From the sequence record LR756508.1: a stretch of DNA of 64,000 nt, one strand, 5' to 3'. This document shows positions 3,498 through 51,434 of this stretch, piece after piece; within the stretch, counting starts at the first letter, position 1; every line of letters starts with the position of its first letter. Under the pieces are notes generated by a model, which ran no database searches, was not told the DNA's origin, and saw only the letters and a program-made list of their open reading frames with translations. The position numbers and the translations under genes were made by a program.

Positions 3498-4796
3498 ATG
3501 GCAACGGTTTTTGGGTTGGACATAAATGAGATTAATACAAATAATCTCATTAGGGATAGACATGTAGAAACGATTTATGGTGTTCTCTCTGGAGATCCAG
3601 CTTATTCTAGTCCAGAACATGTAATCGACTTTACTGGTAGTTTAATGGCAGGTAAAGATAATAAAACTGCCAGTAACGTAAATTTTGGTTTTGCTTTTGG
3701 CGAAAATAATCGAGTCGGAGCAGAGTCAAGCTTAGTAGTAGGGAAGGATGGCAGGTCATTCGCTGAAGGCCAGTTTGTTTTAAGTGGTGGAAAAATCAAC
3801 AAAAGAGGTGATTCTCAAAAGTACGAGACGACTCGCACGTTTCAAACTGAGTCTGGTGGCAATAGCACATCAATGTTAATACCAACCCAAGATAATGTAA
3901 TTTCAAGTGTTGAGATAAGACTTACTGGCGTAGAGAAAAATGTTATTTCTACTAACAGTCTTATTTCTGCACATTATGACCTGGTTTTTGTTAATTCTAG
4001 AATCGATCCAGATAGTTCCGAAAGAGTTGGAAAGATTCTCTTTGTTGATAGAAACTGGCTGGCAAATGACAATAACAACAATCCGATAAATGATTCCACA
4101 AATGGCATTGAAGTCCAGTTTAATGTAACTTCTTCTCACAAGTTAGAACTAGAAGTAACAGACAATAGATCGTCTGGAAATGATATACACTGGTCGATTC
4201 ACATCGACGCATTGGAAACTTTCGCTGGAAAAGACATCAAGAGCTTTGGAGGTCGTGGTTATGAGAGCGGTTACATTTCAGACGGTGGAGAATCTGGATA
4301 CTTAAACCCAATTCAAGGTTGTTTTCCTCCACATTCAGAGGTCTTAGTGAACAATGAAGACCAGCCGATATTCGCTCGTAAAATAAAAGAAATTGAAGTT
4401 GGAGATTCACTTCTAGCGTTCAGTCCATCGCAGTCGGGCTTTGAAGACTACGAGACTTACAGAAGTGATAGAACTGGAATTCAAGAAATGAAGACGAGCA
4501 GCACTGTCGTTGAAGAAGTTTTTTATGGGTTTAAAGATTATATATACGAAGTTAATAATGGACTTGAAGTGTCGGCATCTCAACCTATTTTTGTTTATGA
4601 CCCTTCTGACGACTGCACAAAATTTGTAAGGGTCGATGAACTAAAAAACAACATGAAGTTGCTTAATAATGAAAAGAAATTCGTCAACATAAAAAGTATA
4701 GTCAAAAAGAAAGAACCGAGAGAAGTGGTTAGCCTTGATGTTGAGAAGCTGGATGTCTTCTTTGTGGAAGGTATTCTATTCCATAATAAGCACTAA
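3498..4796 (+). CDS. Putative fibre/structural protein with C-terminal Hint domain
   Basis: YadA-like repeats (FGFAFGENNRVGAESSLVVG). Hint block A GCFPPHSEV and terminal FFVEGILFHN. Confidence 0.6.
   Translation: MATVFGLDINEINTNNLIRDRHVETIYGVLSGDPAYSSPEHVIDFTGSLMAGKDNKTASNVNFGFAFGENNRVGAESSLVVGKDGRSFAEGQFVLSGGKINKRGDSQKYETTRTFQTESGGNSTSMLIPTQDNVISSVEIRLTGVEKNVISTNSLISAHYDLVFVNSRIDPDSSERVGKILFVDRNWLANDNNNNPINDSTNGIEVQFNVTSSHKLELEVTDNRSSGNDIHWSIHIDALETFAGKDIKSFGGRGYESGYISDGGESGYLNPIQGCFPPHSEVLVNNEDQPIFARKIKEIEVGDSLLAFSPSQSGFEDYETYRSDRTGIQEMKTSSTVVEEVFYGFKDYIYEVNNGLEVSASQPIFVYDPSDDCTKFVRVDELKNNMKLLNNEKKFVNIKSIVKKKEPREVVSLDVEKLDVFFVEGILFHNKH
4320..4787 (+). other. C-terminal Hint (BIL/hedgehog-like) autoprocessing domain
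   Basis: Starts CFPPHSEVLV and ends VVSLDVEKLDVFFVEGILFHN. It is followed by K-H-stop, so there is no C/S/T at +1. Confidence 0.75.
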
Positions 4797-17949: not shown

Positions 17950-19572
17950 TTGCCTGCTGATCAGCAACTTAAAGATCAGATCGTAGAGGAGTATATCAAA
18001 TGCGCAGATAATCCTGAGTATTTTCTTCGGAACTATGTCTACATCCAACATCAGGAGCTTGGGCGCATTCTGTTTGATCTTTATGGCTTTCAGGAAAGGT
18101 CCTTAGAAGAAATTCGAAAGCATAGGTATAACATTATCCTGAAAGCACGTCAGATGGGGATTTCAACTCTTGTTGCAGGCTATTCTCTGTGGATGGCTCT
18201 TTTCAATAATGAAACCAAGATATTAGTGGTTTCAATGAAAAGAGATGTAGCTAAAAACCTCGTTCAAAAAGCGAAGTTTGCTCACGATAATCTTCCCGTT
18301 TGGATGCGGGAAGAGAAGGTTGAGGACAATAAAACATCTATAGGTCTATCAAACGGTAGTAAAATATTTGCCGAGTCTACTTCAGGTGATGCTGGAAGGT
18401 CTGAGTCCTTGTCCATGCTTATTATTGATGAGGCAGCGTTCATTGATGACGTAGAAGAGCTTTGGTCTGCCGCAAAACCTACTCTTGACGTTGGAAATGG
18501 TCGAGCGATTGTGCTTTCAACCCCCAAAAATGTGGGGAGTTGGTTCCACAAGCAGTGGAGCCAGGCAATTTCGGGATCAAAAAAACTGAGTGGCAAGGAT
18601 GATGTATGGGAAGGATCTGGAACTAATAATTTTCATCCAATTAAACTGCACTGGTCTCTTCACCCAAATCGAGATACTGAGTGGAGGCAAGAGCAAGACA
18701 CCACCCTTGGACCAGATAAGGCAGCCCGAGAATGCGATTGTAATTTCTCAAGTTCCGGTGATAATGTAGTTGATATTGGAGTCCTTGAATGGTATGAAGA
18801 GAATACTGTTGAAGAGCCGAAAGAGAAGAGGTTAGTAAGAGGCTCTGATGACCTGTGGGTATGGGAGGAACCAGAGCCGTCTGAAAATTACGTGCTTTCC
18901 GCCGATGTGGCAAGAGGCGACGGAGATGATTTTTCTACCTTCCATGTGTTTTCAGTTGAAGACTTAGATCAGAAAATGGAGTATCAAGGAAAAATTACTC
19001 CAGAGACTTTCGCAAATCAGATTTATACGCAAGCATCTTATTATAATGATGCTTTAGTTGTAGTAGAGAGGAATAGTTTTGGGCGGTCTGTTCTTCAAGA
19101 GCTAATAGATAGGGGGTATAGAAATATACTCTATACGTCCAACGACCTTTCACTTGTTGACATAAGAAAAACAAGAGACATTAACGAGGGAAGGAAGACA
19201 AAGCCCGGACTCGATACGAACAGAAAAACGAGGCCACTTATAATATCTCGCATGAAAGAGTTCATGCGAAATAAGCACTGTAATATTAGAAGTTCAAGAC
19301 TTATTGAAGAATTTCGGACATTTGTTTGGAAGGGTGACAAGCCTCAGCACATGCCAGGGTATAACGATGATCTTGTTATGGCTGCAGCATTTGGAATATG
19401 GGTAAGAGACAGTGCTTTAAAGTATCAAGACCAGCTTAATGACGTTACGAAAAAGACTCTGGAGCGATTTTCTACTGGAAAGGGCCTGTATACTTCCAAA
19501 GGAAAAACCGAGGACCCTTACACGGTGAGCCAGGATGGGAAAAAGCACGACATTCGGTGGCTTTTTGAGTAA
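17950..19572 (+). CDS. gp17: Terminase large subunit
   Basis: ILKARQMGIST (Walker A region), IIDEAAFI (Walker B), ADVARGDGDDFS and DDLVMA (RNase H-like nuclease). TTG start. Confidence 0.95.
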   Translation: MPADQQLKDQIVEEYIKCADNPEYFLRNYVYIQHQELGRILFDLYGFQERSLEEIRKHRYNIILKARQMGISTLVAGYSLWMALFNNETKILVVSMKRDVAKNLVQKAKFAHDNLPVWMREEKVEDNKTSIGLSNGSKIFAESTSGDAGRSESLSMLIIDEAAFIDDVEELWSAAKPTLDVGNGRAIVLSTPKNVGSWFHKQWSQAISGSKKLSGKDDVWEGSGTNNFHPIKLHWSLHPNRDTEWRQEQDTTLGPDKAARECDCNFSSSGDNVVDIGVLEWYEENTVEEPKEKRLVRGSDDLWVWEEPEPSENYVLSADVARGDGDDFSTFHVFSVEDLDQKMEYQGKITPETFANQIYTQASYYNDALVVVERNSFGRSVLQELIDRGYRNILYTSNDLSLVDIRKTRDINEGRKTKPGLDTNRKTRPLIISRMKEFMRNKHCNIRSSRLIEEFRTFVWKGDKPQHMPGYNDDLVMAAAFGIWVRDSALKYQDQLNDVTKKTLERFSTGKGLYTSKGKTEDPYTVSQDGKKHDIRWLFE

Positions 19573-19899: not shown

Positions 19900-21681
19900 A
19901 TGGCAGAAATTCCAGAAAAATACAATGATTTAGATTTTGTTCCGCCTAAAGCAGCTCAAGAAAACGCGCAGAAAGCTTTAAGATGGAGAGATGAGCACGG
20001 CGATGAGATTGATGCAGGAACAAGGGTTGGATGGATTCGAGCCAACCAGCTTGCAAAAGGAAAAAAGCTTTCTCCCGATATTGTTCGTCGGATGGCTCAA
20101 TTTAATCGCCACAGAAGCAATTCAGAGATTGCTGATAAGCATAAGGGTGAGCCTTGGAAAGATAATGGATATATGGCCTGGTGTGTTAGTGGCGATACAA
20201 GAGTTTTAACTAACAATGGTTACATTCCTATAAAAAAAATATATGAGTCTGATCAAGAGTTTAAGGCACTCTCATATAATCCAGAGGAGTATCGTTTTGA
20301 ATATAAAAAAATTACTAACAGATTTAGAAAAAAATCAGATCCATCAAAGTTTTTAAGAATAGATCTTGGACGTCCCCATCGAGCAGTTGCTGGCCGTGAA
20401 CATTTAAAGATCACAGCAGAACATGAGATCATGACGGGAGGAGAATGGCTTTCATCTAAAAAGTTAGAGAAAAATGATTTTGTAGACATCGCTAACAACT
20501 TTGTTGACTCTACTACTAAGAAGATAATTTATGGTTCTCTTTTAGGAGATGGTTCATTAGACAAAAATGGCAGGTTTGTTGAAATTCACGGTATGAACCA
20601 GAAAGAATATGCATTAGAATTACAAAGACTTTTGAAAAAACTAGATTGTAGAGTTAGCACTCATATTTCAAAATCTGGATATGGTGGTGATAATGAAAAA
20701 ATCCAGTTACGATCCAAAGTTAACTATTCTCTCAAAAAGCTTCGGGATTCTTTATATACCCCTACTAAAAAATTAGAAAAAAGTTTTTTAGGGCAGATTG
20801 ACAGTATTGCTATGGCCTTTTGGATCATGGGGGATGGTAGTTTACATGAGTGCAAAAATAATCAAGACAACTATTATTATCGAATTCATACTGAGGGCTT
20901 TGATAACCAATCAATTTCAAATTTATCAGATTACTTCGAAACGAAAAATATTAACCATTATATCTATCAAAGAGGTAATACTGATGGAAAATATTTTAGG
21001 ATTCCAAGAGAAGATGCTAAAAGGTTAAGCAGTGAGATAGCAAATTATGTTTGCGAGCCTATGAGTTACAAGCTGTATCCTGAACATCGAGAAAAAAAGT
21101 ATTTCTTAAAAGATTTCGAACCAGAAACTGCATTTGAAAAAAATAAAATTAAAATTAAAAATATAAAAAGATGCTCAGAATTTTCGGATTATTATCTCAA
21201 AAAACATGACTTAAATTATCAGTACGATATTAAGGTGAAAGATAACCATAATTATGTAGCAGATGGGGTAATTGTTCATAATTGTCTCTGGGGTGGTGAT
21301 GAAGGAGTAGACTGGGCAATAAGAAAGACCGATCAAATGGACAGGAGAGATAACCAGCAGAATGAATCATCAACATTCCGAACAGACGAAATGAAAAAAT
21401 TAAAAGAAAAAAGACTTCGGAGAGTCATTCGTGAAATTGTAAATGAAACTTTGTATGGAAAAGAGTTCGGGAGCAATTATACTTTCTACGATAAAAGTAG
21501 TGACGAAAAACTCGGTAGTTTTTCTTCTCACAATACAAAACTCGTAGTATTCAGGGAGTCTAAAGAAAAAGTATATATGAAGGTAACAAATAAAAGAACT
21601 GGAGAAACTTCAGGGAAAATCTATGTTGAAAATGTAGAGGAGCTTCAAGACTTCTTGGATGTTGTGAATATAATAGCTTAA
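19900..21681 (+). CDS. Head-morphogenesis-associated protein (GTxVGWxRANQLA...WxxWGG domain) with an intein and a C-terminal leader-motif domain
   Basis: Extein GTRVGWIRANQLAKG...GYMAW|CLWGGDEG. Internal MKKLKEKRLRRVIREIVNE. Confidence 0.7.
   Translation: MAEIPEKYNDLDFVPPKAAQENAQKALRWRDEHGDEIDAGTRVGWIRANQLAKGKKLSPDIVRRMAQFNRHRSNSEIADKHKGEPWKDNGYMAWCVSGDTRVLTNNGYIPIKKIYESDQEFKALSYNPEEYRFEYKKITNRFRKKSDPSKFLRIDLGRPHRAVAGREHLKITAEHEIMTGGEWLSSKKLEKNDFVDIANNFVDSTTKKIIYGSLLGDGSLDKNGRFVEIHGMNQKEYALELQRLLKKLDCRVSTHISKSGYGGDNEKIQLRSKVNYSLKKLRDSLYTPTKKLEKSFLGQIDSIAMAFWIMGDGSLHECKNNQDNYYYRIHTEGFDNQSISNLSDYFETKNINHYIYQRGNTDGKYFRIPREDAKRLSSEIANYVCEPMSYKLYPEHREKKYFLKDFEPETAFEKNKIKIKNIKRCSEFSDYYLKKHDLNYQYDIKVKDNHNYVADGVIVHNCLWGGDEGVDWAIRKTDQMDRRDNQQNESSTFRTDEMKKLKEKRLRRVIREIVNETLYGKEFGSNYTFYDKSSDEKLGSFSSHNTKLVVFRESKEKVYMKVTNKRTGETSGKIYVENVEELQDFLDVVNIIA
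20182..21282 (+). mobile_element. Intein with LAGLIDADG endonuclease (367 aa)
   Basis: CVSGDTRV start, IYGSLLGDGSL and FWIMGDG blocks, NYVADGVIVHN end, +1 Cys. Confidence 0.9.
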
Positions 21682-21762: not shown

Positions 21763-24700
21763 ATGGCAAAAGAAACAAGATCTACATTAGGAAAGGCACT
21801 TTCAAGACTCTTCTCTTCTAATATAGTCGTTAGAAATCTTGGAGGAAACCAGCTCAAAATTGTCGATCCCTCCAATATCCAAAGCGTAGCAAGCAAATAC
21901 TACGAGACAAAATATAAAGGGCTTCACTCGTATAACGAAGGAGGTAGAGCGCACCGCCAACACCAGCAGGCTCCAGGTAGCAACATTGGCTACCTTTCAG
22001 AGAGAACTGGCCTGTATCGCGATTATGAAACGATGGATACCGATGCCATTATTTCTGCTGCTCTTGATATGTACGCCGACGAGGCGTGCGCAGAAAACGA
22101 GTATGGAAATGTCTTGACTATTGACGCAGGGGATCAAGAAATAAAAGACATTCTCCACAATCTCTTTTACGAGATTCTTGATATTGAGTTTAACCTCAGG
22201 TGGTGGGTTCGTACCTTAACAAAGTATGGCGATTGTTACCTCAAACTTTCAATTTCCGACGAGTATGGAGTCGTAAGCGCAGAACCGATGTCGCCTTTTG
22301 AAGTTGAAAGGATGGAGCGAACCGACTCAGACGATCCTTACTCTGTTACGTTTAAGCATAAAGGATTTTCAAACCAGCCAGAGTATGAATTCTGGCAGGT
22401 TGCACACTTCCGTCTTTTGTCGGATGGAAACTATCTGCCATACGGGAAGTGCCTGGCACCCGAAACAAAAGTTTCTACTGAGTTCGGAGAAAGGAGTATT
22501 TGTAATATTGAGCCAGGGGATTCGGTCTGGACTTATGATTATGAAAACGAGAAGTTTGAGCTTAGCACAGTGAAAAACACTAAGTGCTCAGGTGAAAAAG
22601 AATTAATTAAAATCTCAACGAAATATAACTATGTAAGGTGCTCGAAAAACCATCCTGTCTTAGTAGTTGATAAAGAAACGAGAGAGTATTGTTACAAGAA
22701 AGCGGCTAATTTATTAGTTGGAGATCTTTTGGTCCAGTCAGATAATCAAGAAACTGGAAGTTTTGGGGGTGTTGAAGGAAAAGATGCCGCTCTTTCGCCT
22801 GTAAAGTCAGTGAGAAAAAGCGGAAAAGAAGATGTCTGGGATATCCAAGTTAATTCTAACAATAACAACTTTGTAGCGAATAGAACAGTTGTTCATAATT
22901 CCGTTTTAGAGGGTGCAAGAAGAACTTGGAAACAGCTCTGCCTGCATGAACAAAGTCGCATAAAAACTGCGGATGGCCCTAAGAAAATTAAAAATGTGAC
23001 CTCCGAAGACAAAGTATACTCTTTTGATCCAGAGAGTGGCGACTTGGTTAAAACATCCGTGAAAGCCTGCATGGAAATGGGAAGTCAGGACACCTATACA
23101 GTCTCGACAAAGACTAGACAAATAAGAGCTACTGATCGCCACGGACTTTTAGTCTTTAACAAAGATAAGAATTTTCATTATAAGGCAGTGGAGAATCTCC
23201 AAACTGGCACGGATAAGTTAATCGTGCCGAAAGACGGTGGGAGCCATGAACTGCAAAATATTAGAAGTGTTGAGTTATTCGAAGAAAACTCAAAGACTTA
23301 TGACTTGGAGGTAGAGAACGATCTTCATAATTTTGTAGCCGATGGAGTAGTTTCTCATAACACTCTGCTAGAGGATGCCATGCTTGTCCACCGCATCATG
23401 AGGGCTCCAGAAAAAAGAATCTTTCGTATTGACGTGGGGAATATCGAGCCCGATGCAGTTGACACGTTTATGGATCAAATTGTCCAGGAGATAAATAAAA
23501 CTCCACTTATTGATCCAGAGACGGGGGAGTATAACCTGAAGTATAATATGCAGAATATGATTGAGGACTATTACCTTCCTGTTCGGGGCGATGAGTCTGG
23601 CACCGAGATCGACACTCTTTCGGGGCTTGAGTATCAGGCGATTGAAGACGTCGAATACTTGCGGAAGAAGATGATGACTGCTCTCCGCATTCCAAATGCA
23701 TTCCTTGGATACGAAAAAGAACTTGAAGGAAAATGCCTTCACCCCGATACCAGAATCGAACTTCTCTCGGGTGAAAGTATGAGGGTGGAAGATATAGCCG
23801 TAGAGTATGAGACAGATGAAGATTCTCTCTGGACCTATTCTTATGATTTTGAGGAAAACCGAGTGGTTCCTGGAAAAATTGTGGAAGCCGAGAAAACGAG
23901 AGAAAACGTTGAAATCGTTGAGGTTGTGTTAGACAACGGCGAAACGGTGAAGACAACTCCAGACCACGACTTTATCCTTCAGGACGGCACGGAAGTGGAA
24001 GCTCAAAATCTGGAGGAAGGCGATAGCTTGAGGACGATTGAGAGAAGGAAAAAAGAGCTTGGGAATAACACCTGCGAATACGAACAGGTATGGCAACCAG
24101 AGGAGGAAAAGTGGGAGTGGACCCACAAGATGGTTGACAGGTATTTTAATGGTGAAATTGAAAGAAACGGTTATAGCGAAGATGGGCGATTTTCTTACGA
24201 TAATCTTACCGTCGTACACCACGAAGATTTTGATCGCTACAACAATTCTCCGAACAACCTGCGGAGAATGAACTTCAAGGATCATCGGGAGCTTCATAAC
24301 GAAAATCTTTCCGATGAGTGGTACGAGTGGCAAGATAAAAGAGCCGAGCTAAATAAAACTGAGGAGTATAGGGAGTGGGCCTCAAAGAGAGCGAAGAGGT
24401 GGATGGAGGAAAATCCTGAAAACAAATATAACATTCGTGACGTCTGGCTCTCACTCTCTCCCGAAGAGCGTTCTGAGATTGTAGCGGATGGGTGGAACGA
24501 AGAAAGAAAGAAAAAACAAGCAGAGCGAGCTCGTGAAAACAGCCGAGCCCAGCAGATGCTTGAAGCGAAAAGAGAAAATAATTTCGAGAGCACTCTTGAA
24601 GGCGAAGACCATCCAAGACATCGAAAACGACCTTCATTTGATGAAATCGTTGAGTTTGTTGAAAACTATGAGGGCGATCCAGAAGATGTTTCAACAATAT

Positions 24701-25923
24701 GGAATTTGGAAGATTCATTCGGCTTGACAAAGTATATTCTTCAAGAAGTAATTGAAGAAAACGGTTATAATTGTACGCAATTTATGAATGAGTTTTGGGG
24801 CTTCAAGCGTGGTAGACCGAAAGATCTGCATCCCGAGACTTTTATTGATCTTTCGGCTTCCTGTGAGGATATGGAGGAATTTGTTGATAGAATTGATGCT
24901 TATTCGAAGCGAACTGCCAAGTCGATAGTAGAAAATAATGGGTTTGAGTTTGAAGAGTGGAAAGAGAATATTTTAGGGTCTCGATATAATCACAAAGTGG
25001 TTGAAGTTAACGAGCTAGAGGAAAAAGTTGACACATATAACATTGAAGTAGAGGATAAAAATAATAACCATAACTTTTTGACTGCCACAGGTTTAACCCT
25101 CAAAAATTCGACGTTGAGTCAGCAAAGTATTAAATTCGCCAATCAGGTAAAGTATATTCAAAAGATTGTTGTTTCCGAGCTAAAGAAAATAGCGATGATC
25201 CATCTTTTCTCCCTCGGAATCAGAGACCAGAGGCTAGTTCAGTTTGACTTATCCCTCACCTCCCCTTCCACGGTCCAGGAGAGTGAATACCTCGACCTAC
25301 TCAGCCAAAAAGTTGATCTGGCGAGAACTATTACCGAACTCCCATTGTTTTCTACCGACTGGATTTACAAGAAGCTCTTCAACCTTTCCGACGACGAAAT
25401 TGAGAGGCAGAGAGACCTCAAGAAAGACGATTGGAAGAGGCAGTTTCAACAGGACCAGATCACGAGAGAAGGAAACGACCCAGTTAAAACTGGCCAGTCT
25501 TTTGGAACTCCTCACGACCTCGCCCAGAGTGGTTCTGCAAACATTAAACCTCTTGATCTTGAGAAGAAAGAAAAAGAAAAGCAGAAGAATAAAGCCGTAA
25601 AGAATATGCAGAAATCGAAGCAGAATAAACTGGGAGGAGATCCGCTAGGAAAAGATAAAGCATTTGATAACTCCAACCTGCGAACTGGCGACCCAGACTA
25701 CGAACAAAGATACAGAGATAGAAGGGGACTTCCTGTCGATCACTTTCTGCCAGGAAAAAAGAAAGACTTGATAAAAGAAAGCCTGTCCTCTATAGAAGAC
25801 GCAGATAAAATTGAAGAAGCCATAGAAAATATCGATGCTGCCGGAGGAGTTTCCAAAGAAGACCTTTCAGACTATGAAAAAGGTACATTTATGGATGAAA
25901 GTGTGTTGGATCACAGCGTGTAA
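21763..25923 (+). CDS. gp20: Portal protein with three inteins (about 637 aa after splicing)
   Basis: gp20 motifs YETMDTDAII, LLEDAMLVHRIMRAPEKRIF, EDYYLPVRGDESGTEIDTLSG, YLRKKMMTALRIP. Confidence 0.95.
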   Translation: MAKETRSTLGKALSRLFSSNIVVRNLGGNQLKIVDPSNIQSVASKYYETKYKGLHSYNEGGRAHRQHQQAPGSNIGYLSERTGLYRDYETMDTDAIISAALDMYADEACAENEYGNVLTIDAGDQEIKDILHNLFYEILDIEFNLRWWVRTLTKYGDCYLKLSISDEYGVVSAEPMSPFEVERMERTDSDDPYSVTFKHKGFSNQPEYEFWQVAHFRLLSDGNYLPYGKCLAPETKVSTEFGERSICNIEPGDSVWTYDYENEKFELSTVKNTKCSGEKELIKISTKYNYVRCSKNHPVLVVDKETREYCYKKAANLLVGDLLVQSDNQETGSFGGVEGKDAALSPVKSVRKSGKEDVWDIQVNSNNNNFVANRTVVHNSVLEGARRTWKQLCLHEQSRIKTADGPKKIKNVTSEDKVYSFDPESGDLVKTSVKACMEMGSQDTYTVSTKTRQIRATDRHGLLVFNKDKNFHYKAVENLQTGTDKLIVPKDGGSHELQNIRSVELFEENSKTYDLEVENDLHNFVADGVVSHNTLLEDAMLVHRIMRAPEKRIFRIDVGNIEPDAVDTFMDQIVQEINKTPLIDPETGEYNLKYNMQNMIEDYYLPVRGDESGTEIDTLSGLEYQAIEDVEYLRKKMMTALRIPNAFLGYEKELEGKCLHPDTRIELLSGESMRVEDIAVEYETDEDSLWTYSYDFEENRVVPGKIVEAEKTRENVEIVEVVLDNGETVKTTPDHDFILQDGTEVEAQNLEEGDSLRTIERRKKELGNNTCEYEQVWQPEEEKWEWTHKMVDRYFNGEIERNGYSEDGRFSYDNLTVVHHEDFDRYNNSPNNLRRMNFKDHRELHNENLSDEWYEWQDKRAELNKTEEYREWASKRAKRWMEENPENKYNIRDVWLSLSPEERSEIVADGWNEERKKKQAERARENSRAQQMLEAKRENNFESTLEGEDHPRHRKRPSFDEIVEFVENYEGDPEDVSTIWNLEDSFGLTKYILQEVIEENGYNCTQFMNEFWGFKRGRPKDLHPETFIDLSASCEDMEEFVDRIDAYSKRTAKSIVENNGFEFEEWKENILGSRYNHKVVEVNELEEKVDTYNIEVEDKNNNHNFLTATGLTLKNSTLSQQSIKFANQVKYIQKIVVSELKKIAMIHLFSLGIRDQRLVQFDLSLTSPSTVQESEYLDLLSQKVDLARTITELPLFSTDWIYKKLFNLSDDEIERQRDLKKDDWKRQFQQDQITREGNDPVKTGQSFGTPHDLAQSGSANIKPLDLEKKEKEKQKNKAVKNMQKSKQNKLGGDPLGKDKAFDNSNLRTGDPDYEQRYRDRRGLPVDHFLPGKKKDLIKESLSSIEDADKIEEAIENIDAAGGVSKEDLSDYEKGTFMDESVLDHSV
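22450..22899 (+). mobile_element. Mini-intein 1 in portal (150 aa)
   Basis: YGK|CLAPETKV...NFVANRTVVHN|S. No endonuclease. Confidence 0.9.
22939..23361 (+). mobile_element. Mini-intein 2 in portal (141 aa)
   Basis: KQL|CLHEQSRI...HNFVADGVVSHN|T. No endonuclease. Confidence 0.9.
23734..25107 (+). mobile_element. Intein 3 in portal with HNH endonuclease (458 aa)
   Basis: EGK|CLHPDTRI...HNFLTATGLTLKN|S, with internal VVHHEDFDRYNNSPNNL. Confidence 0.85.
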
Positions 25924-32479: not shown

Positions 32480-34204
32480 ATGTCAGACAACAAAGACTTG
32501 CTTGTAGATTATCAACCTCTTGAGTATGATAAGGAGGTAATTAAGGAGTCTATTGATAAAGATGATGGGCCGCTGGTGGTGGAGGGAACCCTCCAAAGAG
32601 CCGACGCAAAAAATCAAAATGGTAGGGTGTATCCAAAGGACGTGCTGAAAGATGAAGCTGAGAGGTACATGAAAGAAAAGGTGAATAAGAATAATGCGTT
32701 AGGCGAATTAGATCACCCTGATTGCCTCAAAAAACATAGCGCACAAGCACTTACGGTGGATGGGTTTAAGTATATATCCAATGTTGAAGTAGGTGAGTCC
32801 ATCGTTACAATTAATCCAGATACTGGCGATGTAGAGATAGAAGAGGTCCAGGAAGTAATTGACGAAGAATATAGTGGACCAATGTATCAGATCAGTTCTG
32901 GTAGAATGGATATCCAGGTCACTCCCAACCATAGATTTCTACTTCTTCCACGAAAAGACTATCCTGACCGTGATCCGTACTGGGTGAATGCAGAAGAACT
33001 ATATGAGAACAGAACCAGTCACAGTAAATCCCGAATTCCAAAAGAAATTTGGGGAGGCTGGAACGGAAAAAGTAATGTAAATGGAACTTCCAAACCACTT
33101 CATGAGAACTTTGCGTTTCCGTCAATCGATTCAGATGTTTTCTTTAAGTTCATCGGAATCTGGCTTGCGGACGGAGATACAGTAACTGACAGAAATGTTG
33201 TCCAACTGCACCAAGTCAAGGAAGAAAGCACTCAAGAAATTCGAACTCTTCTTTCAAAATTCCCGAACGATTTGACCTGGAGTGAAGAAAACAAGGAAAA
33301 TGGTTTCGGAAATACAAAAACAATATTTAGAACCCGAAATTCAGAGCTGTATTCTTATCTTCGAGATAATTTCGGCGAAGACTGTTATTCAAAAGAAATC
33401 CCAGCAGATGTAAAAAATGCACCACCAGAAAAAATCAAGAATCTCCTTGACTGGTTTGTAAAAGGTGATGGAACAGAGTTTGAAACTCAAAGGAGTGACA
33501 CAAGAAGAAGATTCTTCTCCACGTCGGAAAAACTAGTTGATGATCTCCAAGAAATAGCATTGAAACTGGGTCATAATGGCTCTATTCAAGAATTTGATCC
33601 TATGAATGATGCTCCGATTGGAGATCGAAAAATAAAATCAGAAAACAAAGAAAAACTTTACATCTATGAATTTCTCAAAAATGATGGTTATGGATTAGAT
33701 AAGAGGTGTAGTGATATTAAGAGGTTTAATTTTGATGGAAGAGTAACATGTCTTTCTGTTCCAAATGGCACCTTTTACGCTAAAGATGAAAATGGAGCCT
33801 GCTTTTGGACCGGCAACAGCTCAGTAGTAAACCTCAAAAACGTTTCTCATAACGTAATAGACATGGAGTGGGATGGAAATGATCTGAACGGAAAGCTTGA
33901 AATTCTCGATACCCCGTCTGGCGAGATACTTCAAGATCTCCTCGAAGCAGGAATTCGACTTGGAATTTCGTCCCGAGGATTGGGTTCTGTATCAAAAAGA
34001 AGAGATGGAGCTGTTGAAGTTCAAGATGACTACTCGATTGTATGTTTTGATATGGTCAGCTCGCCTAGCACGCATGGTGCATTTATTGAACCCATTAATG
34101 AAGCAGTAGATAGAAGAAGGGTGGAAGAAGCCCAGAAATGGCATTCAGTTGACCGAATGGCACAAGAAATTGTTGGAGAACTTTCTGAAAAATACTCGGT
34201 TTAG
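32480..34204 (+). CDS. gp21: Prohead core protease with intein (about 209 aa after splicing)
   Basis: LQRADAKNQNGRVYP, LGELDHPD, GISSRGLGS, FDMVSSPSTHGA. Confidence 0.95.
   Translation: MSDNKDLLVDYQPLEYDKEVIKESIDKDDGPLVVEGTLQRADAKNQNGRVYPKDVLKDEAERYMKEKVNKNNALGELDHPDCLKKHSAQALTVDGFKYISNVEVGESIVTINPDTGDVEIEEVQEVIDEEYSGPMYQISSGRMDIQVTPNHRFLLLPRKDYPDRDPYWVNAEELYENRTSHSKSRIPKEIWGGWNGKSNVNGTSKPLHENFAFPSIDSDVFFKFIGIWLADGDTVTDRNVVQLHQVKEESTQEIRTLLSKFPNDLTWSEENKENGFGNTKTIFRTRNSELYSYLRDNFGEDCYSKEIPADVKNAPPEKIKNLLDWFVKGDGTEFETQRSDTRRRFFSTSEKLVDDLQEIALKLGHNGSIQEFDPMNDAPIGDRKIKSENKEKLYIYEFLKNDGYGLDKRCSDIKRFNFDGRVTCLSVPNGTFYAKDENGACFWTGNSSVVNLKNVSHNVIDMEWDGNDLNGKLEILDTPSGEILQDLLEAGIRLGISSRGLGSVSKRRDGAVEVQDDYSIVCFDMVSSPSTHGAFIEPINEAVDRRRVEEAQKWHSVDRMAQEIVGELSEKYSV
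32723..33817 (+). mobile_element. Intein with LAGLIDADG endonuclease in gp21 (365 aa)
   Basis: HPD|CLKKHSAQ...CLSVPNGTFYAKDENGACFWTGN|S, with FIGIWLADG and WFVKGDG blocks. Confidence 0.9.
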
Positions 34205-34243: not shown

Positions 34244-35944
34244 ATGGAAGAAAATAAAACAGATAAGCTGAAAAGGTGGATCAAAGATAACTTTTTTTGT
34301 TCTGGCGGCGGCAGATTAAATGCAAAAATGTGCCGGAGAGAGTGGTTTGAAAAGTACTGTCACATCGATAAACTTGAAGAACTAAAAAGCCTTACCAGCT
34401 TTTTAGCTTCAGATGTTAATATCAGTCAGAGATTTTATCATATTCTAAACTATAAATTAGAACCCACAGAGTGTGGTCGGAAAGGATGCGATGAAATCCC
34501 TACGTTCCAGTCCTTCTCTATGGGTTATGAAGACTTTTGTTCCATCGAATGTGCTCAACAGTCAGAGGTAACAAAGAAAAAAATTAAAGATACATTTAGA
34601 GAAAAGTATGGAGTAGAGCATCACCTTCAAAAAGAAGAGTTCTTGGAAAAGCAACGAGAAACTGTAAGAGAGAAGTACGGAGTTGATAACGTTTCTCAAG
34701 CTGAAGAGATCAAGAAAAAGAAAAGAGAGACTTGCCAAGAAAATTTTGGAGTAGATAACCCCATGGAGTCATCTGAGGTAAGAAAAAAATCTATTGAAAC
34801 CTGGCTTAAAAAATATGGAGTCGAAAATCCTTTGAAAGATGAGGATATAAAAAAGAAGGTGTTTTCAACGAGGAGAAAAGATGCTTTTGAAAGTTATGTA
34901 AGAAGGGACAGGTTCAAAGAAGATGAAGTTAAACCTTTGTTCGATAAAAACTCATGGAAAGGCAAAGCAGAAGAGCATAAATTTAAGTGCTTGAGATGTG
35001 AAAATATATTCAAGTCTAAAATAAGATCGGATAGAAGGATAAGATGCTATAACTGCTACCCATCTCAGAAGACATCTAAAGCCGAGAAAGAAGTCTATTA
35101 TTTTCTGAATGATCTGCTTGACTGCGAGGTTAAAAACAACACCTGGGGTATCATAGACGATCAAGAATTAGACATCTTCATTCCCGAAAAAAATTTAGCT
35201 ATAGAATATGATGGTTTGTATTATCATTCAGAGTTTAACGGAAACTGTGGCAGATCTTACCATTTAAATAAAACAGAGAAGTGTGAAGATAAAGACATTC
35301 AGCTAATCCACATCTTCGAAGATGAGTGGATAGATAAGCAAGATATAGTTAAAACTCGGTTGAAACATATTCTCGATGAGACCGATGATTCTTTATATGC
35401 AAGAAACTGTAAAATAAAAAAAATGTCTCCATCCAGAAAAAACTCATTTCTAAATAAGCACCACCTCCAGGGAGAAGACCGATCTAAAATAAAACTCGGA
35501 GCATTTTTTGAGAATGATTTAGTTTCGGTTATGACGTTTTCAAACAAGAGGGTTGCATTTGGAAATAAAAACTCTAACGACAGAGAATATGAGATTTCGC
35601 GTTTCTGCACCGCAGACAAAAACGTGGTTGGAATTGCTGGTAAGTTTTTGAGCTATTTCAAAGAAAAATTTGATCCAAAAGAGATTATCACCTACTCGGA
35701 TAGGCGCTGGAGCCGCCATCCAAACGTTTACGATAAACTCGGATTCAAGTTGGAGAAAAAGAGCGAGCCGAACTACTGGTACCTAAAAAACGAGCGTAGA
35801 ATGCACAGGTTCAGTTTTCGTAAAGATGTACTAAAAGACAAACTTGATGAATTTGACTCAAACCTTACGGAGTGGGAGAATATGCAAATGAGTGGTTTTG
35901 ACAGGATTTGGGACTGTGGGAATCTAAAATACGTCTGGAATTAG
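34244..35944 (+). CDS. Free-standing homing-endonuclease-like protein: basic repeats + Vsr/PD-(D/E)xK nuclease + GNAT/Mom-like C-terminal domain
   Basis: KYGVENP-type repeats, SKAEKEV...ELDIFIPEKNLAIEYDGLYYH, EISRFC...TYSDRRWS...RIWDCG. Confidence 0.75.
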   Translation: MEENKTDKLKRWIKDNFFCSGGGRLNAKMCRREWFEKYCHIDKLEELKSLTSFLASDVNISQRFYHILNYKLEPTECGRKGCDEIPTFQSFSMGYEDFCSIECAQQSEVTKKKIKDTFREKYGVEHHLQKEEFLEKQRETVREKYGVDNVSQAEEIKKKKRETCQENFGVDNPMESSEVRKKSIETWLKKYGVENPLKDEDIKKKVFSTRRKDAFESYVRRDRFKEDEVKPLFDKNSWKGKAEEHKFKCLRCENIFKSKIRSDRRIRCYNCYPSQKTSKAEKEVYYFLNDLLDCEVKNNTWGIIDDQELDIFIPEKNLAIEYDGLYYHSEFNGNCGRSYHLNKTEKCEDKDIQLIHIFEDEWIDKQDIVKTRLKHILDETDDSLYARNCKIKKMSPSRKNSFLNKHHLQGEDRSKIKLGAFFENDLVSVMTFSNKRVAFGNKNSNDREYEISRFCTADKNVVGIAGKFLSYFKEKFDPKEIITYSDRRWSRHPNVYDKLGFKLEKKSEPNYWYLKNERRMHRFSFRKDVLKDKLDEFDSNLTEWENMQMSGFDRIWDCGNLKYVWN

Positions 35945-47903: not shown

Positions 47904-49538
47904 ATGAATAACTTTGATCTCAGCCAGTTTAAGACAGGTTCTTCTCCGGAGCAGAAGCTCCTGGAGCAGAGCAGAGAGCTTGTCGACAAATGGTCTCCTA
48001 CCGGCCTTCTCGAAGGTCTTGAGGACGACCATGAAGTACATGGCGTATCAATCTTGCTCGAAAATCAGTATCAACAGCTACTCAAGGAGGCATCCCGAAC
48101 TGGAACTAGTGAGGGTTCTGAGGAGTGGAGCGGAGTTGCTCTTCCACTTGTTAGAAGGGTCTTTGGCGAGATCGTAGCCAAGGAATTTGTTAGCGTTCAG
48201 CCCATGAACCTGCCTTCTGGTCTTATTTTCTACCTCGACTTCCGTTACGGCTCTAGCCAGCCAGGATTCGAAGAAGGTGGTTCCGTTTATGGTAAGACTG
48301 GAACGTTCGAAGATGTAGAGGGCGCTCCTTCCGGAGCACTTTACGGATCAGGACGTTTCGGATACTCCGTAAACGACCAGCTTGCCCAAGACGTGTCCCC
48401 TCACGCCATTAACGACGTGACGGACGCAAGGGTGAATTTCGATGAGAACCTGGTGGACAGAACCGGAGATCTCGCTGGAGTAGAGGTAGACCTTCCAAGT
48501 CGAGTAGATACGGAAGGAGTTAGGGCCTTTACTATCGCCGCAGGTGATATTTCCGAATATTACCCTGCTCACACGCGATACGTTCAGGAAAATGGCGACG
48601 GCACTCACCGCGTCGAGTTCATCGTTCTTCCTACGAACTCATCCACTTACGGATATGGTTCTGGAGAGTCCGCAGACGACGTTGACGTGGAGTATCACGT
48701 GCAGCCGCCTGCTTACGACCGTGGAGACTTCGAGGAGCGCGACGACCAGAGCATCCAGAACGCTGGCGCAAGCGACTTCCAGCCACTGGATATTCCTGAG
48801 ATTGACTTTGACCTTTCTAGTGAGCCGATTGAGGCGAAAACCAGAAAGCTCAAAGCAGTCTGGACTCCTGAGCTCGCGCAGGACCTGAACGCTTACCACT
48901 CCATCGACGCCGAGGCGGAGCTTACCTCAATGCTTTCGGAGTACATTAGCATGGAGATCGACCTCGAAATCTTGGATATGCTGATCCAGAACGCTCTTAC
49001 CAAGGAGTACTGGAGCACGCTTCCGGGATACGAGTACGACCCGAACACTGGTCAGTTCCAAGACCAGCGAAGTCACACGGGTACGAAAAACGAGTGGTTC
49101 CAGACCCTTGGAAACAAGATCCAGAGGGTATCGAACAGGATCCACCAGAAAACCATGAGGGGTGGAGCAAACTTCCTCGTTTGTTCCCCAGACGTGGCAA
49201 CCATCCTCGAATCTATTGAAGGATTCAGGGCAGACACGGATGGAACCCAGATGGACTTCGCGATGGGCGTCCAGCGCGTTGGAACCCTAAACAACAGGTT
49301 CCAGGTTTACAAGAATCCTTACTTTGTAAACAACGTGATCCTTGTTGGATTCAGGGGTCAGAACTTCCTTGAGACTGGCGCAGTTTACGCACCGTATGTG
49401 CCGCTCATTATGACTCCAATCGTATATGACCCGAATAACTTCACTCCGCGAAGAGGCGTAATGACTCGATACGCTAAAAAGATGGTCCGTCCAGAGTTCT
49501 ACGGACTCGTAGTGGTTGATAAGCCATCTAGAGTTTAA
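47904..49538 (+). CDS. gp23: Major capsid protein
   Basis: FVSVQPMNLPSGLIF, AKTRKLKAVWTPELAQDLNAYHSIDAEAELTSMLSEYI, GAVYAPYVPL, GVMTRYA. Confidence 0.97.
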   Translation: MNNFDLSQFKTGSSPEQKLLEQSRELVDKWSPTGLLEGLEDDHEVHGVSILLENQYQQLLKEASRTGTSEGSEEWSGVALPLVRRVFGEIVAKEFVSVQPMNLPSGLIFYLDFRYGSSQPGFEEGGSVYGKTGTFEDVEGAPSGALYGSGRFGYSVNDQLAQDVSPHAINDVTDARVNFDENLVDRTGDLAGVEVDLPSRVDTEGVRAFTIAAGDISEYYPAHTRYVQENGDGTHRVEFIVLPTNSSTYGYGSGESADDVDVEYHVQPPAYDRGDFEERDDQSIQNAGASDFQPLDIPEIDFDLSSEPIEAKTRKLKAVWTPELAQDLNAYHSIDAEAELTSMLSEYISMEIDLEILDMLIQNALTKEYWSTLPGYEYDPNTGQFQDQRSHTGTKNEWFQTLGNKIQRVSNRIHQKTMRGGANFLVCSPDVATILESIEGFRADTDGTQMDFAMGVQRVGTLNNRFQVYKNPYFVNNVILVGFRGQNFLETGAVYAPYVPLIMTPIVYDPNNFTPRRGVMTRYAKKMVRPEFYGLVVVDKPSRV

Positions 49539-49721: not shown

Positions 49722-51434
49722 ATGCCAAGAGACTGGAGCAAAGAGAAAAATCCAAATTACGTTGACATACAAAAAGAAGAATTAAAGACAAAAATACTGG
49801 AGGAGTATACCTCCAAAGAACTTGCAGATTATTTCGACGTCAACCAGAACACAATTACAAACAAAGTTCAAAAGTTCTGGAATGCTGGATTAAGAGAAGT
49901 GAGGAAAAACTTGTATGAAGATAACGCTAAGTATGGAAGATGCAAAATTTGTAACCAGCCTCTTGAGTCCAACCAGAAAACTTACTGCTCAAACGAATGT
50001 AAATTTTCCGATGAAGAATACAATCAATCCAGGGTTCCCGATAAGAAAAACAATGAAAATAAAAAGGCCGTTTGTAAACTGTGTGATTACGAGTCTACTG
50101 ACTATAAAAATGTCTCTGGCGCGTTAACAAAACACCTGAACCAGAAGCATAATGGAGATTTTAAAGTCGAAAAACTATTTCAAATTGAAGAGAAAGAAGA
50201 AGTAAGTTATTTGGAATGTCCAGAATGTGATTGGAAGACAAAAGATGTTGAAAACCAATCTGGCTCATTTACGAAACATATTCAAAAACAACATAAAAAT
50301 GTTCTTTCTTTTGTTGAAGATTATCCTTCCACAAAAAGTATTCTACCAGTCGGGAAGTTTAAACGAAAGAAAAGATTAGAAGAGAATGGCGTCAAATGTG
50401 AGATCTGCGGAAAACTATTTGATAAACTTACTAATACGCATCTTAAAAAACATGACATAACCCCTACTGAATATAAAATTAAGTATGAGAGTAAGACCTA
50501 CTCAGAAAACCACTATCAGAAGTGTAAAAAACACTATCATGAGTTTTTGGAAGGAAATGGTGCTATCTTCGTTTCAGAAGCAGAGAAAGAACTCAAAAAG
50601 TTTCTTGAGTCTCTTGAGGTTGATAATATTGAGACTAATGTTCGTAGTATAGACGAAGTAAGTGAAATTGATATATTAGTACCAGACTTTGATCTCGGGA
50701 TTGAATACAACGGCCTGCCTTATCATTCGCAGGGTTTTAATGATAAAGGTAAATGGTGCCACTGGAACAAAACGAAAAAGTGCAGAGAAAATGGAATAAA
50801 CCTTATCCAAATATTTGGTGATCAGTGGAATAACAAAAAAGAAATAGTAAAATCGAGGCTAAAACATAAACTAAACCTTGGGACAAAAACTAAAATTGGG
50901 GCAAGAGATTGTAAGTGTAGAGAAATTAGTAACACTCAGAAACGTTTGTTTTTAGATAGAAACCACATAAGGGGCACTGTAGGCTCAATGGTTTCACTTG
51001 GGTTAGAAAAAGAAGGTGAGCTGGTATCGGTAATGACATTCGGACATTCGAGTTCTAATTACGAACACGAGCTTTCAAGATTTGCCGTAAAACAAGACTT
51101 TGTGGTTCATGGAGCAGCGGGAAAAATGTTTTCGCATTTTAAGAAAAATTACAATTCAAATTCGGTTGTAACGTATTTAGATCTTTCATGGTCTAGTCGA
51201 GATGATAACTTTTACAGTCAATTAGGTTTTGAGTTCGATGGTGAGGTTGATCCTTCTTACTCATACACAAAAAACTACCATAAAAGACTTCATAAATCTA
51301 ACTTTTCAAAGTCCAGTATTAAGAAAAAATATCCAGACCAATACAACTCAAATCTCACGGAGTGGGGGAACATGAAGAAGCTCGGGTTTGATCGAATATG
51401 GGATTGCGGCAAAATCCGTTACGTATGGAAGTAA
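49722..51434 (+). CDS. Free-standing homing-endonuclease-like protein: C2H2 fingers + Vsr/PD-(D/E)xK nuclease + GNAT/Mom-like domain
   Basis: CKLC...HLNQKH, SEAEKEL...EIDILVPDFDLGIEYNGLPYH, ELSRFA...RIWDCG. Confidence 0.75.
   Translation: MPRDWSKEKNPNYVDIQKEELKTKILEEYTSKELADYFDVNQNTITNKVQKFWNAGLREVRKNLYEDNAKYGRCKICNQPLESNQKTYCSNECKFSDEEYNQSRVPDKKNNENKKAVCKLCDYESTDYKNVSGALTKHLNQKHNGDFKVEKLFQIEEKEEVSYLECPECDWKTKDVENQSGSFTKHIQKQHKNVLSFVEDYPSTKSILPVGKFKRKKRLEENGVKCEICGKLFDKLTNTHLKKHDITPTEYKIKYESKTYSENHYQKCKKHYHEFLEGNGAIFVSEAEKELKKFLESLEVDNIETNVRSIDEVSEIDILVPDFDLGIEYNGLPYHSQGFNDKGKWCHWNKTKKCRENGINLIQIFGDQWNNKKEIVKSRLKHKLNLGTKTKIGARDCKCREISNTQKRLFLDRNHIRGTVGSMVSLGLEKEGELVSVMTFGHSSSNYEHELSRFAVKQDFVVHGAAGKMFSHFKKNYNSNSVVTYLDLSWSSRDDNFYSQLGFEFDGEVDPSYSYTKNYHKRLHKSNFSKSSIKKKYPDQYNSNLTEWGNMKKLGFDRIWDCGKIRYVWK

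What the first reader, a model, noticed from the sequence alone, without database searches (positions are those of the whole stretch)
21763..25923. Portal gene with three inteins, two of them only 13 residues apart
Seen: 749 of 1386 aa are intein. Mini-inteins 1 and 2 flank the 13 aa extein SVLEGARRTWKQL, just before the conserved LLEDAML motif. Known: inteins favour conserved sites and are mostly reported in nucleotide-handling enzymes; portals are unusual hosts. Inference: three splicing events must finish before the ring assembles, which could act as an environmental (salt, redox or temperature) checkpoint. Skipping of the short extein could also create an alternative product.
Basis: partly seen in the sequence, partly recalled or inferred. 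Interest (0 to 1): 0.65.

Follow-up and report, generated by a model that had tools for sequence, protein, structure and literature searches.

The report
Phage portal gene carrying three inteins
The only portal gene of a 484-kb phage from a salt-rock metagenome is interrupted by three self-splicing protein elements (inteins), two only 13 residues apart; this is real, but it is one case of a much wider intein infestation of this portal family, not a special regulatory device.

Summary
ORF 21763-25923 (1386 aa) is a T4-type (gp20) portal with three in-frame inteins: I1 (aa 230-379, mini), I2 (393-533, mini) and I3 (658-1115, with an HNH endonuclease). That is 749 intein residues, with a 13-aa extein between I1 and I2. 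Intein-free homologues align with gaps exactly at these bounds. A sibling phage has the I1 site empty and a full-length LAGLIDADG intein at the I2 site.

All catalytic positions are kept. All three inteins are under purifying selection (dN/dS 0.03-0.11 at dS about 0.7-1.5). It is the only portal gene in the record, so splicing is almost certainly obligatory and efficient.

The sites map to the wing/stem junction, stem helix alpha5 and the tunnel loop of T4 gp20.

Portal inteins are already published. Among 257 relatives I found at least 12 recurrent insertion sites, up to five inteins per portal, and spacers down to 7-9 aa. The same 13-aa pair recurs in a divergent lineage.

Nothing supports an environmental checkpoint or functional skipping of the 13-aa extein.

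Verdict: a real, well-documented new member of a known kind, of moderate interest.

The parts
21763..25923 (+). Portal (gp20-like) precursor ORF, 1386 aa plus stop; the only portal gene in the 484-kb record
21763..22449 (+). Extein E1 (aa 1-229), N-terminal wing part, ends LPYGK
22450..22899 (+). Intein I1 (aa 230-379, 150 aa). Class-1 mini-intein: Cys1, block B SKNH, C-terminal HN, +1 Ser. Relatives such as L018 carry a full-length LAGLIDADG intein at the same site (site b, about T4 gp20 251|252).
22900..22938 (+). Extein E2, 13 aa (SVLEGARRTWKQL): end of the wing plus the start of stem helix alpha5. Contiguous with E1 in sibling P0002 and with E3 in L018.
22939..23361 (+). Intein I2 (aa 393-533, 141 aa). 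Class-1 mini-intein: Cys1, TDRH, HN, +1 Thr. It is the endonuclease-less counterpart of the 420-aa LAGLIDADG intein at the same site in sibling P0002 (site c, T4 gp20 264|265, inside stem helix alpha5).
23362..23733 (+). Extein E3 (aa 534-657): stem, clip and part of the tunnel loop. Aligns to T4 gp20 266-379.
23734..25107 (+). Intein I3 (aa 658-1115, 458 aa). Full-length class-1 intein: Cys1, TPDH, C-terminal Lys-Asn (penultimate Lys, not His), +1 Ser. Site d, about T4 gp20 393|394 in the tunnel loop. A homologue at the same site in L030 also ends KN|S.
24211..24297 (+). HNH endonuclease core inside I3 (aa 817-845, VVHH..NNSP.NL..DHRELH). Invariant in four diverged alleles; dN/dS about 0.07.
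25108..25920 (+). Extein E4 (aa 1116-1386): the rest of the wing, the crown and an acidic/basic C-terminal tail

Best explanation
The phage's single gp20-type portal gene has been invaded at three conserved sites by three independent class-1 inteins.

Shown:
- The elements are in-frame insertions that are absent from orthologues.
- Each has the canonical splice-site residues.
- All are under purifying selection and have been inherited together with the host gene.
- I1 and I2 are mini-inteins. Full-length LAGLIDADG counterparts survive at the same sites in relatives.
- I3 keeps a conserved HNH domain.

Inferred:
- After translation each HINT domain excises itself by the standard route: N-S acyl shift at Cys1, transesterification to the +1 Ser or Thr, Asn cyclisation, then O-N shift.
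- The three events are independent and yield a 637-aa portal, which then forms the dodecamer.
- Unspliced precursor cannot assemble, because the insertions sit in the wing/stem junction, stem helix alpha5 and the tunnel loop.
- The elements are there because they are selfish homing elements. They target the most conserved stretches of a gene shared by co-infecting phages, not because the phage uses them as a switch.
- The 13-aa spacing reflects two neighbouring hot sites both being hit. Both elements then lost their endonucleases once fixed.
For: Bounds and family membership:
- Bounds coincide with gaps in intein-free homologues.
- Pfam portal and intein hits.
- My own N- and C-terminal intein HMMs recover the bounds exactly.

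Natural controls:
- Sibling P0002 has site b empty and a 420-aa LAGLIDADG intein at site c, with exteins differing at about 2% of residues (11 of 637).
- L018 has a full-length intein at site b only, and L030 an I3 homologue at site d only.

Splice-site residues:
- Cys1, block B [ST]xxH and the terminal Asn are kept in all 45 inteins at the three sites (24 at b, 10 at c, 11 at d).
- The +1 residue is a nucleophile at every occupied site in the larger set (39/39 at b, 25/25 at c, 32/32 at d). Empty alleles are mostly Ala at site d, with a nucleophile in only 48 of 238.

Selection:
- Exteins: dN/dS 0.011-0.021.
- I1 about 0.10, I2 0.06-0.11, I3 0.03-0.10, at dS about 0.7-1.5, similar to the exteins.
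- The three inteins, including the 13-aa arrangement, therefore predate the split of three lineages and have been kept functional.

Other:
- One portal gene in the record.
- The I1 model is confident and superposes on the NpuDnaB intein (TM 0.91, rmsd 1.5 A).
- I2 matches the Spl DnaX and Npu DnaB mini-inteins by sequence.
- Site mapping on T4 gp20 (PMC4493910).
- Recent mobility in the family: L030 and L033 exteins are 95% identical in DNA, carry inteins at different sites, and differ mainly beside the occupied sites.
Against: - There are no protein-level data: no proteome, no expression test.
- I3 ends Lys-Asn (Ser-Asn in P0004) instead of His-Asn, and I1 has Ser instead of Thr in block B. 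Both are tolerated variants within their site families, but their effect on rate is unknown.
- The AlphaFold model is poor for the C-half of I2 and for the 13-aa linker.
- dS is near saturation, and the Fisher tests ignore phylogenetic non-independence.
- Purifying selection shows that splicing is needed. It does not show that splicing is unregulated.
Confidence: 0.82

Rival explanations
1. Conditional protein splicing. One or more of the inteins splices only under certain salt, redox or temperature conditions, so portal maturation and head assembly are gated by the state of the host cell in the halite habitat.
For: - The source is a halite metagenome.
- Conditional splicing exists in other systems, for example the two DnaB inteins of M. 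smegmatis, which have different stress responses (PMC6195587, listed).
- I1 has five cysteines and I3 four, which could form redox traps.
- The portal nucleates head assembly, so it would be an effective control point (PMC4493910).
Against: - No sequence feature specific to conditional splicing was found.
- The proteome is not acidic (median pI 5.6; portal exteins pI 5.1, like non-halophile homologues at 5.1-5.5), so a high-salt cytoplasm is unlikely.
- Occupancy of the same sites varies freely between near-identical siblings. That is the pattern of selfish elements, not of a fixed regulatory device.
- Intein-bearing portals of this clade are numerous among public sequences.
Confidence: 0.1
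2. Alternative product. The segment I1-E2-I2 is sometimes removed as one unit, giving a portal that lacks the 13 residues.
For: Only the geometry: two HINT domains 13 residues apart, both class 1, 27% identical.
Against: - The 13 residues include positions conserved in every portal of both alignments (E383, R386, K390, Q391). They form the start of stem helix alpha5.
- No portal among 257 relatives and 21 intein-free ones lacks this segment.
- At 27% identity, hybrid folding of the I1 N-half with the I2 C-half is improbable.
- A loss-of-function by-product is possible, but there is no reason to think it is used.
Confidence: 0.02
3. Degenerate, non-splicing insertions that remain as extra domains in the mature portal.
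For: - Two of the three have lost their endonuclease.
- I3 lacks the penultimate His.
Against: - All nucleophiles and block B His residues are kept.
- dN/dS is 0.03-0.11.
- The +1 nucleophile is strictly tied to occupancy.
- The insertions lie inside a stem helix and the tunnel loop that line the DNA channel (PMC4493910).
Confidence: 0.03
4. Assembly artefact or chimera.
For: - It is a metagenome-assembled genome.
- Only contigs, not raw reads, could be laid on it.
Against: - The same three-intein architecture appears in contigs from two other samples with about 13-20% DNA divergence.
- A second assembler's contig is identical.
- The frame stays open through 4.2 kb.
Confidence: 0.01

Closest known systems
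Portal-protein inteins of mycobacteriophages and actinobacteriophages (Kelley et al. 2016, PMC5050341; ICE-BLAST survey, bioRxiv 10.1101/2025.01.02.630785)
   Same: Class-1 or class-3 inteins inserted in the portal gene of tailed phages. Portal inteins there fall into several separate groups, which implies repeated invasion.
   Different: Those portals belong to another portal family (InterPro IPR009279). This one is Portal_T4 (PF07230). The passages I read do not describe three inteins in one portal or a 13-aa spacing.
SPP1 Gp6-like prophage portal inteins (Novikova et al. 2016, PMC4760082, Table 3)
   Same: Inteins in the phage packaging machinery (portal, large terminase). They sit at conserved motifs of proteins that handle nucleic acid.
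   Different: A different portal family. They are listed as single inteins in prophages of cellular genomes.
Haloarchaeal MCM double inteins, MCM-a and MCM-d (PNAS Nexus 2023, PMC10643990)
   Same: Several insertion sites close together in one essential gene. There are co-resident neighbouring inteins, presence/absence polymorphism between relatives, and a mix of mini and full-length forms. [quoted passage not shown]
   Different: There both inteins keep active LAGLIDADG endonucleases. Here both close neighbours are endonuclease-less, the spacing is 13 aa, and the host is a phage structural protein.
Cyanobacterial DnaB and DnaX mini-inteins (Npu DnaB 4O1R, Ssp DnaB 1MI8/6FRH, Spl DnaX 7CFV)
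   Same: The nearest solved relatives of I1 and I2 by sequence (E 4e-6 to 2e-5) and, for I1, by fold (TM 0.91). Same class-1 HINT horseshoe, about 140-150 aa.
   Different: About 20-26% identity, a different host protein, and bacterial chromosomal genes.
M. smegmatis DnaB with two inteins, one stress-responsive (PMC6195587)
   Same: Two inteins in one essential protein.
   Different: Conditional behaviour was shown experimentally there. Here nothing bears on it.
Intron- and intein-dense crAss-like (Zeta group) and Jug phages (PMC7886860, PMC12880540)
   Same: Large phage genomes whose core genes are heavily colonised by self-splicing elements and homing endonucleases.
   Different: Up to 3 inteins per genome are reported for the crAss-like Zeta group. 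This record gave nine Intein_splicing matches (E <= 0.1), corresponding to seven or eight HINT domains. Six of them lie in a 30-kb head module.

Membership tests
Class-1 intein (HINT splicing domain, Pfam PF14890) | In-frame insertion that is absent from orthologues and placed in a conserved motif | tested here: met
   Gaps at all three bounds against intein-free portals. Sibling alleles have empty sites.
Class-1 intein (HINT splicing domain, Pfam PF14890) | N-terminal nucleophile (Cys1/Ser1) and block B TxxH | tested here: met
   I1 Cys1 and SKNH (Ser variant, shared by most site-b inteins); I2 Cys1 and TDRH; I3 Cys1 and TPDH.
Class-1 intein (HINT splicing domain, Pfam PF14890) | C-terminal Asn preceded by His (block G) | tested here: inconclusive
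   The Asn is present in all three. I1 and I2 end HN. I3 ends KN (SN in P0004, KN in L030 and P0028, HN in six other site-d inteins). The penultimate His is a frequent but not universal feature (my own knowledge).
Class-1 intein (HINT splicing domain, Pfam PF14890) | +1 extein nucleophile (Cys/Ser/Thr) | tested here: met
   Ser380, Thr534 and Ser1116. Across relatives a nucleophile is present at 39/39, 25/25 and 32/32 occupied sites, against 178/219, 158/237 and 48/238 empty ones.
Class-1 intein (HINT splicing domain, Pfam PF14890) | HINT fold | tested here: met
   Pfam E = 8.6e-36 with three stretches. I1 model pLDDT 85-91 and Foldseek match to NpuDnaB, TM 0.91. I2 and I3 rest on sequence only.
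Class-1 intein (HINT splicing domain, Pfam PF14890) | Actual protein splicing | not testable with these tools
   Only indirect evidence: purifying selection and a single portal gene.
T4-type portal protein gp20 (Pfam PF07230) | Sequence membership over the whole extein | tested here: met
   Portal_T4 E = 7.7e-52 over profile positions 3-431 in three pieces. phrog_213 portal E = 1.6e-50. A profile of intein-free relatives hits T4 gp20 structures 3JA7 and 6UZC at E about 1e-29.
T4-type portal protein gp20 (Pfam PF07230) | Gene context of a T4-like head module | tested here: met
   Large terminase at 17950-19572, prohead protease S77 at 32480-34204 and gp23-like major capsid protein at 47904-49538, all on the same strand.
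HNH homing endonuclease (in I3) | HNH catalytic motif | tested here: inconclusive
   Pfam HNH_3 scores 17.6 bits, below its 24.8 cut-off. PHROG HNH endonuclease families match at E = 3.8e-7 and 2.4e-5. The motif HH..NN..NL..H..H is invariant in four alleles at dN/dS 0.07. Cleavage activity could not be tested.
Conditional (environment-sensing) intein | Splicing shown to depend on salt, redox or temperature | not testable with these tools
   No sequence signature defines this class. The non-acidic proteome argues weakly against a salt-in host.

The most novel reading that the evidence does not exclude
The closely spaced double mini-intein (I1, a 13-aa extein, I2) is a stabilised 'dead-end' state. 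Neither element can be lost or can home without disturbing the other. Its splicing kinetics have been co-opted as a timer or stress gate for portal maturation, and thus for head initiation, in a desiccation-prone halite habitat. More broadly, the gp20-type portal would be the most intein-dense gene known: at least 12 sites, up to five co-resident inteins, and spacers down to 7 aa. That would make it a natural library of mutually orthogonal inteins that work side by side.
Probability: 0.08. Interest if true: 0.65.

Novelty: new member of a known kind. Interest (0 to 1): 0.4.

Why it matters
For annotation: the 1386-aa ORF should be recorded as a 637-aa portal plus three inteins. The same holds for three other genes in the window.

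For intein biology:
- The locus and its relatives offer a natural series for studying how neighbouring inteins affect each other's splicing and homing. The series includes the empty site, a full-length intein, a mini-intein, and pairs 7 to 18 residues apart.
- The arrangement has been stable across three lineages with synonymous divergence near 1. That shows two inteins can work reliably with only 13 residues between them.

For protein engineering: sets of inteins that coexist in one polypeptide are candidates for orthogonal tandem splicing.

It does not, on present evidence, reveal a new regulatory mechanism.

Tried and rejected
- The genome search 'own': no genome is held for this window. 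I searched the GenBank record through the locus handle instead.
- PDB sequence search with extein E1 and with E4 found nothing. A profile of intein-free relatives was needed to map the sites.
- hmmalign of long portals to an intein-free profile misplaced the insertions. hmmsearch domain gaps missed the 13-aa extein.
- A pairwise ruler alignment with free gap extension split some inteins at spurious islands, for example the '360/364' pairs. I replaced it with dedicated N- and C-terminal intein HMMs.
- AlphaFold2 of the I1-E2-I2 segment with a shallow 8-row alignment gave mean pLDDT 60.6. Only I1 and the N-half of I2 are usable, so it says nothing about how the two domains sit together.
- Reads: only Logan contigs were available. 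One run holds the stretch and may be the source; two sister runs hold nothing. Minor intein-free alleles therefore cannot be excluded, and there are no RNA data.
- Literature: I found no paper in the held library on inteins in gp20/T4-type portals, and none that mentions LR756508.
- The spliced 637-aa product was never joined for any search or fold. Exteins were searched piece by piece by reference. Inside scripts, a concatenated extein string served as a coordinate ruler and for one isoelectric-point calculation.
- I considered and rejected reading I1-E2-I2 as one large intein with an inserted domain, because each half occurs alone in relatives.


Full report
**What the window is**

The window is bases 124001-188000 of GenBank LR756508.1. 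This is an unannotated 484,177-bp 'uncultured phage' genome. The only public run that holds the stretch is a halite metagenome.

The region is a T4-like head module on the + strand:
- large terminase, 17950-19572
- a 593-aa ORF, 19900-21681
- the portal, 21763-25923
- S77 prohead protease, 32480-34204
- gp23-like major capsid protein, 47904-49538

**The observation**

The ORF is open for 1386 codons. Pfam finds Portal_T4 (E = 7.7e-52, three pieces) and Intein_splicing (E = 8.6e-36, three stretches).

The bounds are Cys230-Asn379 (I1), Cys393-Asn533 (I2) and Cys658-Asn1115 (I3). These total 749 residues, with the 13-residue extein Ser380-Leu392 between I1 and I2.

Aligned with the intein-free portals of Microcystis phage Mel-JY01 and Flavobacterium phage immuto (46% and 44% identical to the query), the gaps fall exactly at these bounds.

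**Natural controls**

A scan of IMG/VR gave 32 related loci. Most complete portals there are 599-655 aa and intein-free. Three are not:
- L018 has a full-length LAGLIDADG intein at the I1 site only.
- L030 has a homologue of I3 at the same site, which also ends Lys-Asn|Ser.
- L033 has an intein at a fourth site.

A sibling phage protein (P0002; found on contigs up to 468,579 bp; locus L036) has exteins that differ from the window's at 11 of 637 residues. Its I1 site is empty. At the I2 site it carries a 420-aa intein with LAGLIDADG motifs, whose splicing blocks align with the window's 141-aa I2.

From this:
- The 13 residues are true extein.
- I1 and I2 are separate elements, 27% identical to each other.
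- Both are endonuclease-less forms of inteins that occur full-length at the same sites in relatives.

Two further contigs from other samples (P0003, P0004) have the same three-intein layout.

**Are they functional?**

Catalytic residues:
- Cys1, block B [ST]xxH and the terminal Asn are present in all three. They are kept in all 45 inteins found at these three sites in the first set of relatives (24, 10 and 11).
- In the larger set, the +1 residue is Cys, Ser or Thr at every occupied site (39/39, 25/25, 32/32). Empty alleles often have other residues. At the I3 site 173 of 238 empty alleles have Ala and only 48 have a nucleophile. The p-values there are not corrected for relatedness.

Selection, from four alleles by the Nei-Gojobori method:
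- Exteins: dN/dS 0.011-0.021 at dS 0.8-1.45.
- I1: about 0.10. I2: 0.06-0.11. I3: 0.03-0.10.
- Intein dS is similar to extein dS.
- The HNH part of I3 is at about 0.07, and its motif is invariant.

The three inteins, including the 13-aa arrangement, therefore predate the divergence of these lineages and have been kept under constraint. The record has only one portal gene, so a failure to splice would be lethal to the phage.

Structure:
- An AlphaFold model of the I1-E2-I2 segment is confident for I1 and matches the NpuDnaB intein (TM 0.91). It is weak for the rest.
- I2 matches the Spl DnaX and Npu DnaB mini-inteins by sequence.

**Where the sites lie**

I used the alignment of E3 and of a profile of intein-free relatives to T4 gp20, together with the published domain limits (PMC4493910):
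- I1 site: T4 251|252, at the wing/stem junction.
- I2 site: 264|265, inside stem helix alpha5.
- I3 site: 393|394, in the tunnel loop that lines the DNA channel and contacts neighbouring subunits.

The mapping is shown. That unspliced precursor cannot enter a dodecamer is inferred from it.

**How unusual is it?**

Portal inteins are already described for mycobacteriophages, actinobacteriophages and SPP1-Gp6-like prophage portals. I found no paper on gp20-type portals in the held library. The sequence databases, however, are full of them:
- A length-restricted search returned 147 portals of this kind within its 762-2425 aa length filter, nearly all with an intein domain.
- Of the best 150 cluster representatives from an unrestricted search, 79 are at least 750 aa long. 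Clustering over-counts intein variants.

I built N- and C-terminal intein profiles from verified cases. These recover the window's bounds exactly. Applied to 257 relatives, they gave:
- Inteins per protein: 66 proteins with none, 140 with one, 31 with two, 14 with three, 4 with four and 2 with five (P0170, P0222).
- At least 12 recurrent insertion sites.
- Shortest exteins between co-resident inteins:
  - 7 and 9 aa in P0182
  - 9 aa in P0095 and P0098 (checked by eye; four Pfam intein stretches in P0098 and P0118)
  - 13 aa in the window's lineage and, independently, in the divergent P0170
  - 15-18 aa in five more

So the triple intein and the 13-aa spacing are real but not exceptional within this family.

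**Mechanism and rivals**

The best reading is three independent, constitutively splicing selfish elements. Two have lost their endonucleases after fixation.

Occupancy differs between siblings at several genes:
- The terminase carries an intein in L036 and L038 but not in the window.
- The reverse holds for the ORF upstream of the portal.
- L030 and L033 show clustered differences beside their different occupied sites, as expected from co-conversion during homing.

This is the pattern of the homing cycle. It fits the published picture of neighbouring inteins in haloarchaeal MCM (PMC10643990).

The checkpoint idea cannot be excluded, but nothing supports it. The proteome is not acidic (median pI 5.6), so the host probably does not keep a salty cytoplasm. 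Functional skipping of the 13-aa extein is unlikely, because those residues are conserved in every portal examined and start a stem helix.

**Limits**
- There is no protein evidence and there are no raw reads.
- dS is close to saturation.
- The statistics are not phylogenetically corrected.
- The joined spliced protein was not searched or folded. Exteins were handled piece by piece by reference.

Noticed in passing
window 3498-4796 (+): A 432-aa ORF whose last 158 residues (from Cys275, 'PIQG|CFPPHS') form a HINT domain. It ends ..ILFHN and is followed by only Lys-His and a stop, so there is no C-extein nucleophile. It looks like an autoprocessing (N-terminal cleavage) HINT end rather than an intein. 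The HINT part matches phrog_38766 'virion structural protein'.
   Followed up: partly
window 19900-21681 (+), intein 20182-21282: A 593-aa ORF between terminase and portal carries a 367-aa LAGLIDADG intein (YMAW|CVSGDT ... VIVHN|CLWGGD). Siblings L036 and L038 have the 226-aa intein-free form.
   Followed up: yes
window 32480-34204 (+), intein about 32723-33817: The S77 prohead protease has a 365-aa intein with a LAGLIDADG_3 domain. It is inserted right after the GELDHPD motif and ends ..WTGN|SSVV (penultimate Gly). The bounds were not checked against an intein-free homologue.
   Followed up: partly
window 17950-19572 (+) versus L036:1-1903 and L038:1-1908: The large terminase is intein-free (540 aa) in the window but 1001 aa with a LAGLIDADG intein in two sibling genomes. 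This is intein presence/absence polymorphism in the opposite direction to the neighbouring ORF.
   Followed up: partly
window 34244-35944 and 49722-51434 (+): Two large free-standing homing-endonuclease ORFs (phrog_3339, E = 7e-134 and 1e-94). One lies just after the protease and one just after the major capsid gene. The whole record gave nine Intein_splicing matches at E <= 0.1.
   Followed up: no
P0170 (1801 aa) and P0222 (2180 aa), relatives: Each of these portals has five paired intein N/C signatures. P0182 has inteins separated by only 7 and 9 residues. I do not know of a protein with five inteins or of closer spacings in the literature; that statement rests on my own knowledge and was not checked exhaustively.
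   Followed up: partly
relatives, extein-ruler sites 152 and 306 (e.g. P0118, P0044, P0170, P0222): Inteins at two sites begin with Pro (PVK.D / PVR.D) instead of Cys or Ser, and end ..VKN|C/S/T. They may belong to a non-class-1 type. They were not analysed.
   Followed up: no
L030:6983-10183 versus L033:5414-8542: These two IMG/VR portals have 95.1% identical extein DNA but carry an HNH-type intein at different sites (d versus 107). The differences cluster within about 160-290 nt beside the occupied sites, as expected of co-conversion tracts from recent homing.
   Followed up: partly
whole window: Although the source is a halite metagenome, ORFs of at least 150 aa have a median pI of 5.6. The nearest cultured relatives of the portal are a Microcystis phage and Flavobacterium phages. 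The host is therefore probably a bacterium that excludes salt, possibly the halite cyanobacterium. This is a guess.
   Followed up: no
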